Virus record (IMG/VR): IMGVR_UViG_3300037264_008423
Coordinates: 174,437-238,436 of that record
Strand: one strand, 5' to 3'
Length of the DNA: 64,000 nucleotides
The notes beneath the pieces were generated by a model. The model made no database searches, had not been told where the DNA came from, and saw nothing but the letters and a program-made list of their open reading frames with translations. This document shows positions 11,121 through 37,376 of the stretch, piece after piece. Each line of letters begins with the position of its first letter. Positions within the stretch are counted from its first letter, which is position 1. Both the position numbers and the translations under genes were made by a program.

Positions 11121-11126
11121 TTTTAA

Positions 11127-11214
11127 GCGCCGTAGCTCAGAGGCAGAGCAAACCCAAAGCCTGTAACCAGGTGAGCGGTGGGGATGAGAGGTTCGAGTCC
11201 AATCCGGCGCACCA
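11127..11214 (+). ncRNA. tRNA-like RNA with expanded anticodon arm
   Basis: GCGCCG/CGGCGC acceptor, D arm, TTCGAGT loop, ACCA end; anticodon arm replaced by about 30 nt containing CCTG-TAAC-CAGG hairpin. Confidence 0.55.
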
Positions 11215-11243
11215 TTCTTCCGTCTGGCGGTGTAATTAAAGGC

Positions 11244-14369: not shown

Positions 14370-14440
14370 TGGCTTGTTGACTCCGGTGTGTCCGACCGTC
14401 GCTAAAGCGGCAGAAGCGGGTTCGATTCCCGCCAAGTCCA
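14370..14440 (+). pseudogene. Degenerate tRNA-like element, possible CTA anticodon
   Basis: Perfect T arm GCGGG-TTCGATT-CCCGC, partial acceptor, loop CGCTAAA; poor D arm, no CCA. Confidence 0.35.
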
Positions 14441-14557
14441 TCGCTTGCGGCACAAAGTGCGCAGTGCTGCCGTTTTCTGATTTAAGGCCGTGTCCGGCAA
14501 TTCGTGAGCCGGGCTAATCACTCGCGCTATCTTGGGCGGGGCGGCGCTTACTTTATA

Positions 14558-15388: not shown

Positions 15389-15599
15389 AAAAGATAGGGC
15401 CTCCCCGGCCTGGAACTAAATTTGTTTACCAAGGTATCGACTACCGTTTCCGGTCTTTCAGCGTTGAGTATCAGGTCTTAAAATTGGACCCGGACGAGCG
15501 CCTGATCCACCTAAGCCGCCGTAAGCGCATTACCTACGAGGCATGGCAGACCTTGATGACGCATTATAGGGCTGCGATTACTTTTGTTAGTTGAATTTT

Positions 15600-15673
15600 G
15601 ACGGGCCGATTGGCTGTGGGTTATCTTCACTTGAAATGAAGCGATACGTGTTCAACTCACGTCCGTGGCTCCA
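15600..15673 (+). pseudogene. Degenerate tRNA-like element (TGA loop, short variable region)
   Basis: CTTCA-CTTGAAA-TGAAG and ACGTG-TTCAACT-CACGT arms, CCA; acceptor poorly paired. Confidence 0.4.
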
Positions 15674-15732
15674 TGTGCCACGGCCTCGGAGGTAGCAAAA
15701 ATTCCACGCCGCCCCTTGTCCGTCAATTAAAT

Positions 15733-15859
15733 CGCAGGGAAGTAAAACGGCAAAAACCCGTGACCATCCCTTGTCCGGTAACGGGCCGACCGGAAACGGT
15801 TATCATACATCAACCTAAAGAGTTGAAATTAGGAGGTTCGACTCCTCCCCCTGCGACCA
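15733..15859 (+). ncRNA. tRNA-like RNA with large D-arm insertion bearing a Ro-type bulged helix
   Basis: CGCAGGG/CCCTGCG+ACCA, GGAGG-TTCGACT-CCTCC T arm, TCAAC-CTAAAGA-GTTGA arm; insert TTGTCCG-GTAA-CGGGC-C-GA. Confidence 0.65.
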
Positions 15860-15863
15860 TTTT

Positions 15864-15951
15864 GGAAGGTGACCGGATACACGAGGACCCTGGCCCGAAC
15901 CCAGGCGCGGTGAAATACCCGTCGTGAGTGGAAATCTCACACCTTCCGCCA
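15864..15951 (+). tRNA. tRNA-Ser(CGA), C33
   Basis: GGAAGGT/ACCTTCC, CCTGG-CCCGAAC-CCAGG, long variable arm. Confidence 0.85.
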
Positions 15952-16032: not shown

Positions 16033-16347
16033 TTTCATTCGGGGCCGATGAAAAGTGGGAAGTATGGACGTGGCAAAGATACCAGACCTGGGCGACCGGG
16101 CTGTTTTTCACGGCGCGCACGAGCATCTGATAGTGCTTCAGCACCCGATTTGGCTCACTTTCCGGCTGTATGCTGGTTGACTGCATACAGCCTAATATAT
16201 CAAATAAGAATTACCAATGCTATAGGGTCTTTACCCCATATTTTGGCTTAATTTGTGTTGATATTGACTTGGAACTATAAGTAAACATTTAAGCCTGGAT
16301 AGCTCAGAAGTAGAGCGCAGTCAGATTAACTGTTGTTTTAGTTCTAT

Positions 16348-16422
16348 AGCGCATTAGACTAACAGCAAGGTCGCCGGTCTTTCTAACCGGAAGCGCGGGG
16401 GCAGCACCCGCATGCGCTGCCA
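16348..16422 (+). tRNA. tRNA-Glu(TTC)
   Basis: AGCGCAT/ATGCGCT, CCGGT-CTTTCTA-ACCGG. Confidence 0.85.
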
Positions 16423-16425
16423 TTT

Positions 16426-16875: not shown

Positions 16876-17004
16876 GGGGACGTAGCTTAATCTGGTAGAG
16901 CGCCAGGGTGAAAACCTGGAGGTGCGGGTTCAAATCCCGTTGTAATTACCCTCCTACAATCCTTGCCTGAAAGGGCCGAACTATGAGGATTATCGTCCCC
17001 GCCA
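16876..17004 (+). tRNA. tRNA-Phe(GAA) interrupted by a 53-nt structured insert between T arm and 3' acceptor strand
   Basis: 5' GGGGACG pairs with CGTCCCC-GCCA at 16994-17004; insert 16941-16993. Confidence 0.75.
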
Positions 17005-17108: not shown

Positions 17109-17822
17109 TTAACTACCGGGCTTGAGGGCCACGACAAAGTGAACCTCGTTACGGAGCCTCGTTTCGCAGCCGAGCGCCGCCAGCAGATCCATGATGGGGC
17201 GCGTTTTTTCAGGCGGGACCACGGGATCGTAGCAGTTGAGCGTGGCATGGCGCAGGACAGTAAAACCCGCTTGGGTTAAAATGGCGCGCAGGTCATTGAT
17301 GGAAAGCTCGCGCACATGCATCTCGTAGGAAAAGGGACTGCCCCCGGCCATGACCCGCCAGAGCGTGTTGAGCGAGCTTAAGTTAGGCGTGGTCAGAAAC
17401 ATTTTTCCGCCCGGTTTGAGGCAGGCGTAGCAGGTGTTTACAAAATTTTTCAGGCCATCGCCCACGTAGGAGTCGCGGTGAAGCACGTCCTGGACCTCCA
17501 GGTCCTTGATATGCTCGATGACCTCCATGTTCAGCAGCAGGTCATAGTGGTTGGTCTTGTCGGTGAAGACGGTGCGCAGGTCCGTGCTGGTGTTTTCAAC
17601 CGGCAGGTCCGGGAAGAGCAACCGCAGTCCGTCCGTGAAGGCTCCGGGAGAGCCGACCTCCAAAACAGAGCTGGCCTCCGCTAACTCCTGCTCGATAAAA
17701 AGCATCGAGTTGACGTAACGCTGGCAGTGGGGAATGACCCAGGGGTTTCGGCTGTGAGGACTGTCGTGCGGCACGAACTCCAAAAAATATTTCTCAACTC
17801 TGGCTTTAAAGATTTCACCCAT
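17109..17822 (-). CDS. Class I SAM-dependent methyltransferase
   Basis: VLEVGSPG, YDLLLNMEVIEH, LKPGGKMFLTTPN; start placed at MGEIF to avoid the tRNA. Confidence 0.88.
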   Translation of the reverse strand: MGEIFKARVEKYFLEFVPHDSPHSRNPWVIPHCQRYVNSMLFIEQELAEASSVLEVGSPGAFTDGLRLLFPDLPVENTSTDLRTVFTDKTNHYDLLLNMEVIEHIKDLEVQDVLHRDSYVGDGLKNFVNTCYACLKPGGKMFLTTPNLSSLNTLWRVMAGGSPFSYEMHVRELSINDLRAILTQAGFTVLRHATLNCYDPVVPPEKTRPIMDLLAALGCETRLRNEVHFVVALKPGS

Positions 17823-17861
17823 ATGAAAGCCAGAACCAATTTTTAGTGTAAACAAATTTAA

Positions 17862-17938
17862 GGAAGCATAGCTCAATCACGAAGAGCGGGAGTCCTACCC
17901 ACTCAAGGTTGCTGGTGCGAGTCCGGCTGCTTCCACCA
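17862..17938 (+). tRNA. tRNA-Val(TAC), atypical anticodon loop
   Basis: GGAAGCA/TGCTTCC, loop CCTACCC (C33, C37). Confidence 0.7.
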
Positions 17939-21406: not shown

Positions 21407-22135
21407 CTAAGCTGAGGTTACACCCCCGCCATCGCTGGGATAGAAAGAGGCTTTAGAGGGCGGCAGATAGCGGTCCGAGCGCCGTAGCTTTTGGCGAGGA
21501 TTAAGGGTTGTGGCCCGGATGTAAGCGCCGCGATCTTCCCGGAACAGGCCGGAGTCTAGCGCGTCCGACGCGCAGGTGTCACAGAAGAGGGTGCCCTTTT
21601 CGTCGGCCATGTCCACCCGGATCAGGTTGGTCTTGGCGCGCTTAGCGCACCGACCGCCGCAGGCGGGACAGCCAGGATCGGAGCACTCGCAACGGCCAAA
21701 TGGGCGCGACTCGCTTACGGGTGGAACCGGCTGCCAAGTGTGGCCCTTGTCGCGTGTAGTGAACCACCGCTCCAATTGGCATCTATGGCAACGCCAAAGC
21801 ACTTTTTCTCCAGGCTGATAGTGGTGCCCGTGCGACTGGACCTCGATCCACCGGTGCTCGCACTTAGCCTGGTCCTCCGGGCAATGGCCGCAATGCTCCA
21901 AAAGGTTGTCGGCGCGCCGCTGGGTGATGATTCCCTCGTAAGTGCGCGAGGGATCAAACTTGGGCGCAGGCATCAAGATCATGAGCGCCTGGTTATAGAC
22001 ATCCCGCTCCGCCGCCTCGCGGGTGTCCCAGGGCGCGGAGGCGATCCGCTTTCCGCCCGGCAGAAACGCAATGCTGACGAAGCTGTCCGCGTGCGGATAG
22101 GTCTCAACTTCGATCTGGTAATCGCCCACTTTCAT
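21407..22135 (-). CDS. Cys-rich hypothetical protein
   Basis: 242-aa ORF with several CxxC clusters. Confidence 0.7.
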   Translation of the reverse strand: MKVGDYQIEVETYPHADSFVSIAFLPGGKRIASAPWDTREAAERDVYNQALMILMPAPKFDPSRTYEGIITQRRADNLLEHCGHCPEDQAKCEHRWIEVQSHGHHYQPGEKVLWRCHRCQLERWFTTRDKGHTWQPVPPVSESRPFGRCECSDPGCPACGGRCAKRAKTNLIRVDMADEKGTLFCDTCASDALDSGLFREDRGAYIRATTLNPRQKLRRSDRYLPPSKASFYPSDGGGVTSA

Positions 22136-22168
22136 ATGTTAGCTACTCTTTTCAGTTCTAGCATGCGC

Positions 22169-22744
22169 ATGAAAACATTACAGGAAATATATCAGAACCA
22201 TCTGCAATCGGATAAAGGCACGTTTCACAGCTACATAGAAGTTTACGAGCGGATTTTTAGTTCACTTAGATTGGCGGCCAAAAAGGTGTTGGAAATTGGG
22301 ATTGCCGGGGGAGCGTCATTACAAATGTTCGAGGAATATTTTCAAGGAGCCGAGGTCTATGGCGTTGATGCCAGAATTAAACCAACTGGCCCTTTTGGAA
22401 ACTGCGACCTGACCGAGCTTATTGAAACCGGGATGCACCGGATCAGGATTTTAAACGCCAAGGTCAAAGCTCAAGTGGAACTCCACTTTAAGGGCGTAGA
22501 GTTCGATGTCATTATCGATGACGCCAGTCATGACTTGGAGAGCCAGTTAACGGTCTATTCTAATTTCAAAGACAAGCTGTCAGCAAACGGTCTATATGTG
22601 ATAGAAGATGTTTACGAATTAGAACAGCGACGCGCCAGCTATGAGCGCATGGACCCTGAAAAAAATGTAACCATTTACGACCTGCGTCCGATAAAACACC
22701 GAGTAGATGACGTGTTAGTGGTCCTCGGACAGCACAGACAGTAG
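22169..22744 (+). CDS. Class I SAM-dependent methyltransferase
   Basis: SDKGTFHSY...VLEIGIAGGASL...FDVIIDDASH...GLYVIEDV. Confidence 0.9.
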   Translation: MKTLQEIYQNHLQSDKGTFHSYIEVYERIFSSLRLAAKKVLEIGIAGGASLQMFEEYFQGAEVYGVDARIKPTGPFGNCDLTELIETGMHRIRILNAKVKAQVELHFKGVEFDVIIDDASHDLESQLTVYSNFKDKLSANGLYVIEDVYELEQRRASYERMDPEKNVTIYDLRPIKHRVDDVLVVLGQHRQ

Positions 22745-28774: not shown

Positions 28775-29204
28775 GGGGGCGTATTAGACTCGATCTAGTG
28801 CCCTGAACGCTTAGCGACAGCCGAGGATGGTGGTTGGACCTCGATAATACCTCCACCGAAAACATCAAATGCCGAAAGCACTGATGATACGGCTCTCTTA
28901 GCCCAAGCCGAAGCGATCTTCGCCGACCCGGATGAAGTCCTCGCCAAGACCGGCTATGCAGAGCCAGCTTTGGCCTAGCGCCAAACCGTCCACCCTCTGA
29001 CGCCTGCTACGGGGTGTGGGCGTAACCAGCAGGCAAAAACGCGGTCTCTTCCCGTGAACCGCGCCGTAGATCACGTGAGTGTGGCCGGGGTGATGTCTTG
29101 CCGTTCTCTTACCCGGTCATTCTAAATAAAGAAGCGGAGATGCCTGTGGATGCTCGCGCAAGGACTATTAGAGACAGGAGGGGCAGTGCCTCCTCGCCTC
29201 CACC
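28775..29204 (+). ncRNA. ssrA: tmRNA
   Basis: 5' GGGGGCGTATTAGACTCGA; 3' T arm plus CGCCTCC-ACCA with G3:U70; tag frame 28871-28978 after the CAAAT resume context. Confidence 0.92.
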
Positions 29205-29239
29205 AATTTCCGCCTCCACTGTTTACAGTTCTGTAATCC

Positions 29240-30106: not shown

Positions 30107-30268
30107 AGCGCGCGAACCGCGCGGGTCGAATGTGATTGGTTACCATCAAACCGTTGGTTATTGGTGCAAATCCAATCCGGTCCGCAAGGGCCGGTAGCTC
30201 AATCAGCAGAGCAGCGGTTCCCGTAAGGGATTTCCGATCCTGAGCCTTACCCGTGCGGTTCGCGCGCT
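30107..30268 (+). ncRNA. yrlA: YrlA-type Y RNA (circularly permuted tRNA-like domain plus Ro60-binding stem)
   Basis: 19-bp terminal stem; GTCGAATG with bulged C opposite TTACC; T arm, GCAA-closed acceptor, D arm; about 0.8 kb from Ro60. Confidence 0.88.
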
Positions 30269-30992: not shown

Positions 30993-31015
30993 AGGCCGCA
31001 CGCAGCGGCCTTTTT
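30993..31015 (+). terminator. Rho-independent terminator after the Y RNA candidate
   Basis: AGGCCGC-ACGCA-GCGGCCT then TTTT. Confidence 0.6.
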
Positions 31016-31058
31016 GCTGCCACATGGTTGGGGGCAGACTGCGCTGAAAGGAAAAACC

Positions 31059-32708
31059 ATGAGTGTTTACCAGACGGTTAGCCGTAAGGCAACCCCGCAA
31101 AATCAACCCATTCCCGGTTCCAAGCAGGTGAAGAACTCCGCAGGTGGTTACACCTGGCTCCTGGATGACTGGAGCCGCCTGCGCCGATTCCTGGTGCTTG
31201 GCTCCCAGGGTGGAACGTATTACGTCAAGGAACAGGATCTCGTCAAGGCCAACGCGGAAGTGGTTGACCGGTGCTTGGGTCTTGACGCGGCCAGGACGAT
31301 TCAGCAAATCGTGGAAGTTTCGGATAAGGGCCTGGCCTATCGCAACGAGGCGGCGCTCTTCGCGCTGGCCAAGGCCGCCGCCGACCAGAATGAAAAGTCA
31401 CGAGCGTTGGCTCTTGACGCGCTGCCGCAAGTGGCGCGCACCGGCACCCACCTGTTTCACTGGGCAAACTATGTTCAGTCGATGCGGGGCTGGGGCCGCG
31501 CCCTGAGAAAGGCGGTCGGGCACTGGTATAACCAGTGGACGGCGGACGAGCTGGCCTACCAGGTCGTCAAGTATCAGCAGCGCGATGGCTGGTCCCACCG
31601 GGACCTGCTCCGCCTGGCGCACCCGGTCGCCGAGACCGAGGGGCACGACGCGGTATTCCGCTGGGTCCTGGGCGGCCAGGAGGCCCTGGCGGCGCGCACG
31701 GTGAAGCGCCAGCGTCCCGGTCAAGAGGTAAAGCCTGAATACACCTACCCGGATCTGGCTTTCCACCTGCCGCAGTTCATCGAGATCTTTGAAAAGGCCA
31801 AGACGGCGGACGCCAAGACGCTTGTCAAGCTGATCACCGAGCGCAGCCTGCCCCGCGAGGCGATCCCCACGGAGCAGTTGAACTGCCCGGAGGTTTGGGA
31901 GGCGCTCTTAGTCAACATGCCAGCCACGGCCCTGGTCCGCAACCTGGGCAAGATGACCAGCATCGGGCTGGTCAAGACGCTTTCCAAGGCGTCCAAGACC
32001 ATTGTGGACAAGCTGGGTAACGCCGCGTGGCTCAAGAAGTCCCGCGTCCACCCGATGCAGTTTTTGATCGCGGCCAAGGTGTATGCCCAGGGTCACGGGG
32101 AAAAGGGCAAGCTCGCCTGGACGCCGGATCAGTCGGTGGTCTCGGCCCTGGAGCGCGCCTTCTACGCCTCTTTTGGCAACGTCAAGCCCATCGGCAACAA
32201 CGTGCTGATCTCGCTGGATATCTCCAGTTCGATGGGACATACGATGGAAGGCACCTGCTTGTCCTGCTACGAGGCGGAAGCGGCCCTGGCGCTAATCCAT
32301 GTCAGCATTGAGGACACCGTGGGGGTCATGGGTTTCGCCACAAACTACCGGGAAATCAAGATCCGCAAGGGCATGAGCCTGGTGGACGCGATGCAGCACG
32401 TCGCCGGTCAGGGCTTCGGCGGCACGGACTGCTCGCTGCCGTTTCGCTGGGCGGGAACGGAGCGGATGGATGTGAACTCATTTATCACGGTCACGGACAA
32501 TGAATCATGGCACGGCGGTGTTCACCCGTCCCAGGCGCTCAACGCCTATCGCCAGGCTTCCGGCAATCAGGCCCGGTCGGTCGTCATGGGCATGACGAGC
32601 ACGGGCTTTACTATCGCGGACCCCAATGACGCGGGTTCGCTCGACGTGGTGGGCTTTGACGCCTCCGCGCCTGCGCTCATCTCGGATTTCTGCCGGGGTG
32701 ATGTCTAA
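31059..32708 (+). CDS. rsr: Ro60/TROVE ribonucleoprotein (Rsr)
   Basis: NSAGGY..LRRFLVLGSQGGTYY; ARTGTHLF; KYQQRDGWSHRDLLRLAHP; vWA DISSSM, GGTDCSLP, TDNESW, VVGFD. Confidence 0.97.
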   Translation: MSVYQTVSRKATPQNQPIPGSKQVKNSAGGYTWLLDDWSRLRRFLVLGSQGGTYYVKEQDLVKANAEVVDRCLGLDAARTIQQIVEVSDKGLAYRNEAALFALAKAAADQNEKSRALALDALPQVARTGTHLFHWANYVQSMRGWGRALRKAVGHWYNQWTADELAYQVVKYQQRDGWSHRDLLRLAHPVAETEGHDAVFRWVLGGQEALAARTVKRQRPGQEVKPEYTYPDLAFHLPQFIEIFEKAKTADAKTLVKLITERSLPREAIPTEQLNCPEVWEALLVNMPATALVRNLGKMTSIGLVKTLSKASKTIVDKLGNAAWLKKSRVHPMQFLIAAKVYAQGHGEKGKLAWTPDQSVVSALERAFYASFGNVKPIGNNVLISLDISSSMGHTMEGTCLSCYEAEAALALIHVSIEDTVGVMGFATNYREIKIRKGMSLVDAMQHVAGQGFGGTDCSLPFRWAGTERMDVNSFITVTDNESWHGGVHPSQALNAYRQASGNQARSVVMGMTSTGFTIADPNDAGSLDVVGFDASAPALISDFCRGDV

Positions 32709-37210: not shown

Positions 37211-37376
37211 TAAGCGAAAGGAACGTTGAAAGGTAGCGCCACTCCAACTGAGGTCGGGGGTTCAAATCCCTCCTCCGCCCCCAAAATCATATGGCGGAGT
37301 AGCTCAGCGGTAGAGCATCAGGATCAGGCTAACGGCGCTAAGCGTTTTGACGAACAGAGCTAAAAAGCTTCGCTTA
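37211..37376 (+). ncRNA. Second YrlA-like circularly permuted tRNA-like RNA
   Basis: T arm, then CTCCGCC-loop-GGCGGAG acceptor, then D arm; closed by CTGA/TCAG, TAGCGCC/GGCGCTA, TAAGCGAA/TTCGCTTA. Confidence 0.75.

What the first reader, a model, noticed from the sequence alone, without database searches (positions are those of the whole stretch)
15733..15859. 127-nt tRNA-like RNA whose D arm is replaced by a hairpin with the same bulged-C motif
It has a perfect 7-bp acceptor with ACCA, a canonical TTCGACT T arm, and an anticodon-like arm with loop CTAAAGA (AAA). The D region is about 70 nt, containing TGACC/GGTTA enclosing TTGTCCG-GTAA-CGGGC-[C]-GA. This is the same GNRA-capped, bulged-C module as in the tRNA-Phe insert, with different sequence and a different insertion site. 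Two sequence-divergent copies argue for selection on the structure.
Basis: partly seen in the sequence, partly recalled or inferred. Interest (0 to 1): 0.82.

Follow-up and report, generated by a model that had tools for sequence, protein, structure and literature searches.

The report
tRNA-ended Y RNA with capped Ro60 site
This 127-nt gene in a jumbo phage's tRNA array is a Y RNA, the partner RNA of the Ro60 protein the phage also encodes, built in tRNA gene order with an open acceptor stem ending in ACCA and a loop-capped Ro60-binding helix; I found no description of this layout, although it is common next to Ro60 genes in bacteria and phages.

Summary
The element has a 7-bp acceptor stem plus ACCA, a T arm, an anticodon-like hairpin and a GUAA-capped helix with a bulged C. 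That helix matches the Ro60-binding helix of Y RNAs (GGGC[C]GA opposite UUGUCC).

The window encodes Ro60 (31014-32708). Directly upstream of the candidate lies a conventional linear Y RNA (15599-15725) with the same helix. The candidate is a circular permutation of that neighbour.

A pattern scan found the same capped module in 92 metagenome stretches, 61 bacterial contigs and a few viral contigs. In 77 fetched loci a Ro60 gene lies nearby, on the same strand in 76, at a median distance of 316 nt.

A covariance model built without the window ranks the candidate as its best hit in the window (56.8 bits, E 1e-12, exactly these coordinates).

- The D stem is lost, not replaced. Relatives carry both a D arm and the Y stem.
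- The enclosing helix is CCGU/ACGG, not TGACC/GGTTA.

Rfam has no family for this topology, and I found no description in the open literature I could search. Expression, RNA ends and Ro60 binding are untested. I rate it a new variant of a known kind.

The parts
15733..15739 (+). acceptor stem, 5' strand (CGCAGGG); predicted RNase P site at its 5' edge
   Evidence: 7/7 pairs with 15849-55. The acceptor covaries strongly in the family. Model R1 aligns its position 1 here.
15740..15757 (+). remnant of the D region (AAGUAAAACGGCAAAAAC): D-loop-like CGG and the A-rich linker are kept, both D-stem strands are lost
   Evidence: Comparison with family members (GUAGCUCA..GGUAGAGC + A-rich linker) and with the G005 ortholog of Y#1, which has a full D arm. 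No D stem can be formed.
15758..15799 (+). Y stem, loop-capped. Upper stem CCGU 15758-61 / ACGG 15796-99; CC 15768-69 / GG 15792-93; lower stem UUGUCCG 15771-77 / CGGGC[C]GA 15782-89 with bulged C15787; GUAA cap 15778-81. Predicted Ro60-binding site.
   Evidence: Same letters as the terminal helix of the linear Y RNA at 15600-09/15716-24, which the vertebrate Y_RNA model aligns to full length. The geometry matches the family mode. The module is linked to Ro60 genes.
15800..15809 (+). UUAUC motif plus a 5-nt linker
   Evidence: GGUUAUC follows the Ro60-site strand in all three copies in this genome and in five Y RNAs of phage G001. It resembles GGGUUAU of the vertebrate Y_RNA consensus. Its role is unknown.
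15810..15831 (+). anticodon-arm-like hairpin UCAAC-CUAAAGA-GUUGA plus a 5-nt variable-loop-like AAUUA
   Evidence: An equivalent hairpin at the tRNA-canonical distance from the T stem occurs in 23 of 79 family members, with U33 in 20/23, R37 in 22/23 and diverse 'anticodons'. It is also present in Y#1 and in the G004 element.
15832..15848 (+). T arm GGAGG-UUCGACU-CCUCC
   Evidence: The T stem covaries in the family.
15849..15859 (+). acceptor stem 3' strand (CCCUGCG), discriminator A, encoded CCA
   Evidence: About one third of family members encode NCC after the stem.
15599..15725 (+). Y#1, the paralogous linear Y RNA. Terminal helix GACGGGC[C]GA / UUGUCCGUC; upper stem UGUGGG/UCCACG; UUAUC; hairpin with CUUGAAA loop; T arm; 7-bp acceptor-like stem closed by a loop (15663-69/15677-83).
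   Evidence: Full-length alignment to Rfam Y_RNA RF00019 at 18.2 bits, below threshold. Ortholog in G005/G001. Strain variants change only unpaired positions.
16876..17004 (+). tRNA-Phe(GAA) with a 53-nt insert (16941-93) between the T stem and the 3' acceptor strand. The insert holds UUGCCU-GAAA-GGGC[C]GA and GGAUUAUC.
   Evidence: The same chimera occurs in three unrelated contigs, L079, L115 and L071.
31014..32708 (+). Ro60 (TROVE + vWA) gene, the presumed protein partner
   Evidence: Pfam TROVE 2.5e-47 and vWA_Ro60 2.2e-53; 47% identical to the Ro-like protein of Sinorhizobium phage Phosso.
30115..30260 (+). conventional YrlA-like RNA just upstream of Ro60, with terminal helix ..GGGU[C]GA / UUACCC..
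   Evidence: Rfam YrlA partial hit at 33.5 bits, below threshold; fold.

Best explanation
The element is a Y RNA of the tRNA-mimicking (YrlA-like) kind whose gene is laid out in tRNA order. In known Y RNAs the 5' and 3' ends pair to form the Ro60-binding helix, and in YrlA the acceptor-like stem is closed by a loop. Here it is the other way round. The Ro60-binding helix (UUGUCCG / CGGGC[C]GA) is closed by a GUAA tetraloop, and the ends lie in a normal 7-bp acceptor stem followed by ACCA.

Proposed mechanism:
1. It is transcribed with the surrounding tRNAs as one precursor.
2. RNase P cuts at 15733, which also releases the upstream linear Y RNA. The encoded CCA end is trimmed or repaired like a tRNA's, giving a single-chain, exonuclease-resistant RNA.
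3. The phage Ro60 binds the capped bulged-C helix.
4. The tRNA-like body (T arm, D-loop remnant, anticodon-like hairpin) serves as the stable scaffold and effector-binding module. By analogy with the Deinococcus, Salmonella and Thermus-phage systems, the effector would be a host exoribonuclease such as PNPase.

It most likely arose by tandem duplication of the neighbouring linear Y RNA followed by trimming (permutation by duplication).

Shown here: the sequence anatomy, the permuted homology to the neighbour, membership of a large Ro60-linked family, and covariation of the helices. Inferred: transcription, processing, Ro60 binding and the effector.
For: - Anatomy.
- Ro60 gene in the window.
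- The adjacent RNA 15599-15725 has the same helix letters at its termini, and the vertebrate Y_RNA model aligns to it end to end. It has an ortholog in phages G001/G005.
- Rotating the candidate so that it starts in the GUAA loop gives the best alignment to that neighbour: score 50.5, against -0.3 +/- 8.1 for shuffles and -2 unrotated.
- By eye, the acceptor, T, anticodon-like and upper stems of the two paralogs differ at 14 base pairs by double changes, yet every pair is kept.
- The capped module was found in 92 metagenome stretches, 61 bacterial contigs and viral contigs L027 and L028. Most have acceptor + D arm + capped Y stem + T arm at 120-130 nt.
- Of 149 such loci, 77 hold a Ro60 gene in the fetched flank, 76 on the same strand, at a median gap of 316 nt.
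- Family covariation: 216 double-change cells against 52 in shuffles; slid controls collapse. The upper stem averages 6.1 bp with a sequence's own partner against 4.1 with other members' partners.
- Model R1, built without the window, gives the candidate 56.8 bits, E 1.3e-12, over model positions 1-127 = 15733-15859. The best true tRNA scores 40.7.
- Related phage G004 has a 130-nt element of the same layout ending in ACCA.
- Literature precedents: M. smegmatis YrlA is cut by RNase P and gains CCA, and D. radiodurans Yrn2 is co-transcribed with a tRNA (PMC4201824). A Thermus phage Ro60 binds phage Y-like RNAs and host PNPase (PMC12135203).
Against: - No RNA-level evidence. The one metatranscriptome contig covers 15503-15686 only, and such a library may contain DNA.
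- Ro60 binding to a loop-capped helix has never been shown. All characterised Y RNAs use a helix formed by their termini (bioRxiv 10.1101/312249).
- The gene lies 15 kb from the Ro60 gene, not a few hundred nt as in bacteria.
- This copy lacks the D stem and U8, which are nearly invariant in the family, so it could be a decaying copy.
- Phages G001/G005 lack it at the syntenic site.
- The motif reads GCCGAC, not the published GNCGAA.
- The family was collected with a sequence pattern, so invariance of the module and of GTTATC is by construction. Acceptor frames were chosen for at least 6 of 7 pairs.
- Thermodynamics alone slightly prefers a different local fold with a D-like hairpin.
Confidence: 0.72

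Rival explanations
1. It is a working tRNA that carries a Ro60-binding handle: charged, delivered by EF-Tu, and decoding UUU or acting as a suppressor through its AAA 'anticodon'. The tRNA-Phe chimera at 16876-17004 may work this way.
For: - Perfect acceptor stem with encoded ACCA, a canonical T loop, and a 5-bp stem with a 7-nt loop carrying U33 and a purine at 37, followed by a 5-nt variable loop.
- In 23 of 79 family members the equivalent hairpin has tRNA-like loop rules.
- Full tRNA-Phe genes with the module exist in four genomes.
Against: - No D stem and no U8.
- A34-A35-A36 with G37 is not a normal bacterial anticodon loop (general tRNA knowledge).
- 56 of 79 family members have no anticodon-like arm, and where one is present the 'anticodons' are unrelated, so decoding cannot be the family's function.
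- ARAGORN and Rfam tRNA reject it.
Confidence: 0.07
2. It is a non-functional by-product: a recent rearranged duplicate of the neighbouring Y RNA that is decaying.
For: - It is absent at the syntenic position in G001/G005.
- The D stem is lost and U8 replaced.
- There is no transcript evidence.
Against: - All five helices are intact, although their sequences differ from the paralog's by about 14 compensatory double changes.
- The layout matches, to within a nucleotide or so, a family found in many phyla.
- The paralog Y#1 has lost the same D stem and is conserved, with loop-only variation among strains.
- Strain contigs from two other samples carry the first 15-35 nt of the candidate unchanged.
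Confidence: 0.13
3. The hairpin has a role unrelated to Ro60: a processing signal or structural spacer in the tRNA precursor, or a site for another protein.
For: - It sits in a polycistronic tRNA array.
- GNRA-capped GC-rich hairpins are common.
- It is 15 kb from the Ro60 gene.
Against: - The helix letters match the Ro60-site consensus, down to the bulged C.
- The module sits next to Ro60 genes on the same strand in 76 of 77 loci.
- The pattern occurs only in Y-like RNAs in this genome.
Confidence: 0.05

Closest known systems
YrlA (Rfam RF02553), the tRNA-mimicking bacterial and phage Y RNA (Chen et al. 2014, PMC4201824; Wang et al. 2018, bioRxiv 10.1101/312249)
   Same: A Ro60-site helix with a bulged C, joined to a tRNA-like body with a T arm and an acceptor-type stem. 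Encoded with Ro60. Conventional YrlA-like genes are also present in this window (30115-30260; 37233-37344).
   Different: The topology is circularly permuted. YrlA has its ends in the Ro60-site helix, a loop-closed acceptor stem and no free CCA. This RNA has a loop-closed Ro60-site helix and an open 7-bp acceptor with ACCA. The Rfam YrlA model gives no hit on it even at E 10. This copy also lacks the D stem.
[quoted passage not shown]
   Same: A Y RNA with a real 7-bp acceptor stem, an RNase P-generated 5' end and a CCA 3' end.
   Different: The mycobacterial RNA becomes two base-paired pieces of 82 and 65 nt, because the Ro60-site helix still carries the original ends. Here a tetraloop joins them, so a single chain would result, and the order is fixed in the gene.
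Metazoan Y RNAs (Rfam RF00019) and D. radiodurans Yrn1/Yrn2
   Same: The helix has GGNC[C]GA opposite UUGNCC, followed by a second stem and a GGGUUAU-like motif. The neighbouring Y#1 aligns to RF00019 over its full length. Yrn2 is co-transcribed with a tRNA.
   Different: In those RNAs the helix is formed by the termini, and metazoan Y RNAs have no acceptor/CCA module. In Yrn1 the Ro60-site stem takes the acceptor position.
Permuted (two-piece) tmRNA genes and permuted tRNA genes of algae and archaea
   Same: The same structured RNA is encoded in two circularly permuted gene orders, a relationship usually explained by tandem duplication.
   Different: Different RNA families. In those cases the permuted precursors are processed back to the standard molecule or into two pieces. 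Here the two orders would give two different mature topologies, encoded side by side.

Membership tests
Y RNA (Ro60-binding ncRNA, broad sense) | Conserved helix with a GGUCCGA-like strand, a bulged C and a CUUGAC-like partner strand | tested here: met
   CGGGC[C]GA 15782-89 pairs with UUGUCCG 15771-77. The same letters in Y#1 align to the RF00019 consensus helix.
Y RNA (Ro60-binding ncRNA, broad sense) | The Ro60-site helix is formed by pairing of the RNA's 5' and 3' ends | tested here: not met
   The helix is closed by a GUAA loop. The predicted ends lie in the acceptor stem.
Y RNA (Ro60-binding ncRNA, broad sense) | Encoded close to a Ro60 gene and on the same strand | tested here: inconclusive
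   Same strand, but 15 kb upstream of Ro60 (31014-32708), inside the tRNA array. For the family as a whole the feature is met: 76 of 77 on the same strand, median gap 316 nt.
Y RNA (Ro60-binding ncRNA, broad sense) | Physically bound and stabilised by Ro60 | not testable with these tools
   Needs RIP, EMSA or a Ro60 deletion.
YrlA (Rfam RF02553) | Scores at or above the family's gathering threshold (69 bits) | tested here: not met
   No YrlA match on 15733-15859 at E up to 10. Twelve Ro60 loci carrying family members also give no YrlA hit at gathering.
YrlA (Rfam RF02553) | tRNA-like domain with T arm, D arm and acceptor-like stem | tested here: inconclusive
   The T arm and a 7-bp acceptor stem are present. 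The D stem is absent in this copy but present in nearly all family members.
YrlA (Rfam RF02553) | Loop-closed acceptor stem and no free CCA end | tested here: not met
   Open acceptor stem with encoded ACCA.
tRNA (RF00005 / ARAGORN) | Recognised as a tRNA with a complete cloverleaf | tested here: not met
   ARAGORN makes no call. Rfam tRNA gives 17.2 bits over a partial match, against a threshold of 29. There is no D stem. Family members that keep a D arm do pass as 120-155-nt 'tRNAs'.
tRNA-ordered, capped-stem Y RNAs (model R1, built here) | Full-length match to a covariance model built from 60 members, window excluded | tested here: met
   56.8 bits, E 1.3e-12, model positions 1-127 = 15733-15859. 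It is the top hit in the window and in the whole 238-kb genome.
tRNA-ordered, capped-stem Y RNAs (model R1, built here) | Upper stem whose 3' strand ends at the G just before UUAUC, about 8 nt from CUUG on the 5' side | tested here: met
   CCGU/ACGG, with an 8-nt distance equal to the family mode.

The most novel reading that the evidence does not exclude
tRNA-ordered Y RNAs, together with the tRNA-Phe/Y-module chimeras, are real substrates of the tRNA machinery: RNase P, the CCA-adding enzyme, perhaps aminoacyl-tRNA synthetases and EF-Tu. They would then physically couple Ro60 to the tRNA pool or the translation apparatus. One possible role is to let a phage survey, protect or turn over tRNAs during infection. 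They would also be the 'missing' Y RNAs of the many Ro60-encoding phyla in which YrlA searches found none.
Probability: 0.15. Interest if true: 0.9.

Novelty: new variant of a known kind. Interest (0 to 1): 0.74.

Why it matters
- Every characterised Y RNA is described as having its Ro60 site in a helix made by the RNA's two ends, and YrlA is described as a tRNA mimic "without a free CCA end". A large Ro60-linked family with the opposite topology would change that definition.
- The family is currently either unannotated or called as over-long tRNAs.
- It would supply candidate Y RNAs for lineages where few or none were found, including Myxococcota, Gemmatimonadota, Armatimonadota and Chloroflexota.
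- It implies that the tRNA maturation pathway can make a Y RNA.
- In this phage the linear and permuted forms lie side by side. That is a snapshot of how a tRNA, a tRNA carrying a Ro60 handle, and YrlA could be converted into one another, a question raised but left open in the YrlA structure paper.
- It also makes testable whether Ro60 needs free helix ends to bind.

Tried and rejected
- blastn of the region against GenBank phages: no match.
- Exact 19-mer of the hairpin in viral contigs: one hit, L003, inside a coding region with no tRNAs. Treated as chance.
- The search for related loci with the Ro60 protein: nothing. DNA polymerase gave seven related phage contigs instead.
- Looser viral pattern: L033/L036, L035 and L038 show no tRNA frame or other Y-RNA features and look like chance hits. 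L034 and L037 also lack a tRNA frame but lie beside tRNA-like or Y-like sequence, and L034 has a Ro60 gene in its flank. Several metagenome hits also lie in apparent coding sequence with no tRNA frame (L046/L069, L055, L064, L065, L086, L105, L110).
The homologous GG+TTA helix is mostly 2-3 bp in the family, so I rejected it as the conserved fold. I cannot exclude that this one copy forms it.
- Single-sequence constrained folding of all members was too noisy to define the architecture. I replaced it with anchored-helix and hairpin tests.
- RNA evidence: the only RNA run holds a contig over 15503-15686 and nothing over the candidate. This is uninformative for a small structured RNA.
- ORF 15673-15927, which overlaps the element, has no Pfam match and spans three RNA genes. 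Treated as spurious.
- Promoter and terminator scan: nothing decisive. The nearest terminator-like site on the + strand is at 16087-16100.
- Literature: no description of this topology in the searchable library. Two key reviews (PMC10870794, PMC6047535) and the supplements of Chen 2014 are not held, so prior description cannot be fully excluded.
- Sinorhizobium phage Phosso (best Ro60 match) has no annotated RNA next to its Ro60 gene. One GGGCCGA..GGGTTATC site far from it was not followed up.

Full report
**Context.** The window is the last 64 kb of a 238-kb IMG/VR jumbo-phage record. It carries a large tRNA array: 23 ARAGORN calls, with Rfam tRNA matches above threshold at five further sites. 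It also holds a tmRNA (28775-29205) and a Ro60 gene (31014-32708; TROVE 2.5e-47, vWA_Ro60 2.2e-53). The closest GenBank Ro60 relative is the Ro-like protein of Sinorhizobium phage Phosso, at 47% identity.

**Observation.**
- Acceptor CGCAGGG/CCCTGCG plus ACCA.
- T arm GGAGG-TTCGACT-CCTCC.
- Hairpin TCAAC-CTAAAGA-GTTGA followed by 5 nt.
- A 70-nt stretch containing TTGTCCG-GTAA-CGGGC[C]GA.

ARAGORN does not call the element, and Rfam tRNA gives only a sub-threshold partial match. The tRNA-Phe(GAA) gene at 16876-17004 has acceptor GGGGACG/CGTCCCC, discriminator G and CCA. It carries TTGCCT-GAAA-GGGC[C]GA in a 53-nt insert between the T stem and the 3' acceptor strand.

Directly upstream, at 15599-15725, lies a conventional linear Y RNA (Y#1).
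- Its 5' end GACGGGC[C]GA pairs with its 3' end TTGTCCGTC. These are the same letters as the two arms of the candidate's hairpin.
- The vertebrate Y_RNA model RF00019 aligns to it over its whole length: lower stem, bulged C, second stem and GGGUUAU. The score is 18.2 bits, below threshold.
- Its interior holds a hairpin with a 7-nt loop, a T arm and a 7-bp acceptor-like stem closed by a loop. This is the YrlA layout.

Pieces of the candidate match pieces of Y#1 in rotated order. The candidate's 5' half (acceptor strand..GCAAAAA.., CCCTTGTCCG) corresponds to the 3' half of Y#1. Its 3' half (CGGGCCGA..GGTTATC, hairpin, T arm, acceptor strand) corresponds to the 5' half of Y#1. Of all rotations of the candidate, those starting at 15778-15783, inside the GTAA loop, align best to Y#1. 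The score is 50.5, against -0.3 +/- 8.1 for shuffles (z 6.2) and -2 without rotation.

The acceptor, T, hairpin and upper stems of the two paralogs differ by about 14 double (compensatory) changes, and every pair is kept (read). So both copies have been kept foldable.

**Relatives.** DNA-polymerase searches found seven related phage contigs.
- G001/G005 encode Ro60 and five linear Y RNAs on the tRNA-array strand. One of these is the ortholog of Y#1, with a canonical D arm, and it is followed directly by ordinary tRNA-Ile and tRNA-Phe genes. The permuted copy and the Phe insert are therefore absent at that syntenic site, and the D-stem loss is specific to this phage's lineage.
- G004 has a 130-nt element with acceptor, D arm, a capped bulged hairpin, GUGACCGAUUGGGUUAC, an anticodon-like hairpin, a T arm and ACCA.

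**The family.** I scanned for the capped module plus GTTATC.
- Viral contigs: two unrelated contigs have exactly this architecture, L027 and L028.
- Metagenomes: 92 stretches.
- Bacterial genomes: 61 contigs, from Gemmatimonadaceae, Polyangiaceae/Sorangium, Kofleriaceae, Armatimonadales, Anaerolineales and other Chloroflexota, Rhizobium, Deinococcus xinjiangensis and Mycobacterium scrofulaceum.

Most hits show acceptor strand, U8-A9, canonical D arm, A-rich linker, upper stem, CUUGYCCG-loop-CGGGC[C]GA, upper stem, UUAUC, an 8-20-nt segment, T arm and acceptor strand, totalling 120-130 nt. About a third have NCC after the stem.

tblastn with the window's Ro60 protein finds a Ro60 gene in the fetched flank of 77 of 149 loci. 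It is on the same strand in 76, at a median gap of 316 nt, with the RNA upstream in 54 and downstream in 23. Rfam calls these elements over-long tRNAs (42-51 bits) and never YrlA.

Covariation:
- The acceptor and T stems covary massively: 216 double-change cells against 52 in shuffles, and 99% of cells paired against 37-47% when the partner columns are slid.
- A helix anchored at the G before UUAUC averages 6.1 bp with a sequence's own 5' region, against 4.1 bp with other members' regions, over 25 distinct strand sequences.

Caveats:
- The module and GTTATC are invariant by construction of the search pattern.
- Acceptor frames were selected for at least 6 of 7 pairs. Their fixed position two bases before the D stem was not selected.

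**Membership of the candidate.** Model R1 was built from 60 members with the window excluded. It scores 15733-15859 at 56.8 bits, E 1.3e-12, covering model positions 1-127. This is the best hit in the window and in the whole genome. True tRNAs reach at most 40.7 bits, and the Phe chimera scores 30.8.

The family geometry predicts the following for this copy:
- upper stem CCGU 15758-61 with ACGG 15796-99, 8 nt from CUUG, which is the family mode;
- CC/GG at 15768-69 with 15792-93;
- then the lower stem.

Thermodynamics cannot exclude it for this one copy.

The D stem is missing. GUAAAACGGCAAAAAC corresponds to the family's UAGCUCAACGGUAGAGCGCUAAAAAC with both stem strands deleted. So the D arm is lost, not replaced by the hairpin.

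**The anticodon-like hairpin.** A hairpin of at least 4 bp with a 7-nt loop, placed 4-6 nt before the T stem, occurs in 23 of 79 members. Shuffles give a mean of 8.3 and a maximum of 15. U33 is present in 20 of 23 and R37 in 22 of 23, but the 'anticodons' are unrelated. The other members lack the hairpin. This points to descent from various tRNAs, or retention of a tRNA-shaped scaffold. It argues against decoding as the family's function.

**The tRNA-Phe chimera.** The same design, a full tRNA-Phe(GAA) with the module between the T arm and the 3' acceptor strand, recurs in L079, L115 and L071. It is therefore a second conserved way of attaching the module to a tRNA.

**Expression.** The source sample holds the region. 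One metatranscriptome run has a contig over 15503-15686 only. Two DNA runs hold strain variants over 15532-15767. Within Y#1 their differences fall only at unpaired positions, and the first 15-35 nt of the candidate are unchanged. This says nothing either way about the mature RNA.

**Comparison with what is known.**
- Chen et al. [quoted passage not shown] They found few YrlAs in delta-proteobacteria and cyanobacteria, discarded hits overlapping tandem tRNA genes, and predicted that further structural variants exist.
- Wang et al. [quoted passage not shown] They speculated that some YrlAs might be processed to resemble tRNAs more closely.
- A Thermus phage Ro60 binds phage Y-like RNAs and host PNPase (PMC12135203).
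- I found no description of a gene-encoded, tRNA-ordered, capped-helix Y RNA, and Rfam 15 has no such family. Two reviews and the 2014 supplements could not be read.

**Verdict.** The element is best described as a circularly permuted, tRNA-ordered member of the Y RNA/YrlA kind, and in this phage it is a D-stem-less copy. Processing, Ro60 binding and function remain inferences.

Noticed in passing
window 15599-15725: A conventional linear Y RNA whose lower stem, bulged C, second stem and GGGUUAU resemble vertebrate Y RNAs closely enough for RF00019 to align end to end (18.2 bits, below threshold). Its interior is a D-stem-less tRNA-like module. It has an ortholog with a full D arm in phages G001/G005.
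   Followed up: yes
window 16876-17004; L079, L115, L071: A full tRNA-Phe(GAA) with a Ro60-type capped module inserted between the T stem and the 3' acceptor strand. The same chimera occurs in three unrelated metagenome contigs. Whether it is charged, or whether the insert is removed, is unknown.
   Followed up: partly
window 15864-15951 and 16341-16424: By eye, two further tRNA-like genes that ARAGORN and Rfam do not call. The first has acceptor GGAAGGU/ACCUUCC plus GCCA, loop CCCGAAC, a long variable region and a deviant T loop UGGAAAU. The second has acceptor AGCGCAU/AUGCGCU plus GCCA, loop CUUUCUA and a deviant T loop GGCAGCA.
   Followed up: no
window 30115-30260, 37233-37344, 14392-14494: Three sub-threshold Rfam YrlA matches (33.5, 36.6 and 27.8 bits). 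The first lies just upstream of Ro60 and has a terminal helix ..GGGU[C]GA/UUACCC... The 37233 element has a T arm, closed acceptor and D arm, but I saw no obvious bulged-C helix. The phage may encode up to six Ro60 partner RNAs.
   Followed up: partly
G001 (L029-L032), L017 2225-2290: Related phages G001/G005 carry five linear Y RNAs. Some are short hairpin-type without a tRNA module, spread through the tRNA array and next to Ro60. All have GGGCCGA..GGTTATC.
   Followed up: partly
family alignment A1/A2; window 15800-04, 15621-25, 16990-94: The UUAUC motif right after the upper stem recurs in this genome's three copies and in G001, and resembles GGGUUAU of metazoan Y RNAs. In some members it is the 5' strand of the anticodon-like stem, and in the tRNA-Phe chimeras it is paired within the insert. 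Its conservation in the wider family is by construction of my search pattern, so its importance is untested.
   Followed up: partly
L165 (Sorangium), L133 (Gemmatimonadaceae), L028, L150: Several bacterial and viral Ro60 loci with capped-module RNAs also carry dense clusters of ordinary tRNA genes. This suggests a recurrent Ro60 + Y RNA + tRNA-array cassette, possibly mobile or prophage-borne.
   Followed up: no
window 11126-11215: A 90-nt stretch right after tRNA-Tyr scores 31 bits with model R1, through its tRNA-like parts, but ARAGORN and Rfam do not call it. It may be another atypical tRNA-like gene.
   Followed up: no
window 28775-29205; 17109-17876 (-); 21740-22744: A phage tmRNA (Rfam 55.2 bits) and two methyltransferase-domain ORFs lie among the tRNA genes. 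The second (21740-22744) matches Pfam only below its gathering cut-off. No RtcB-type ligase was seen among the 30 ORFs scanned with Pfam.
   Followed up: no
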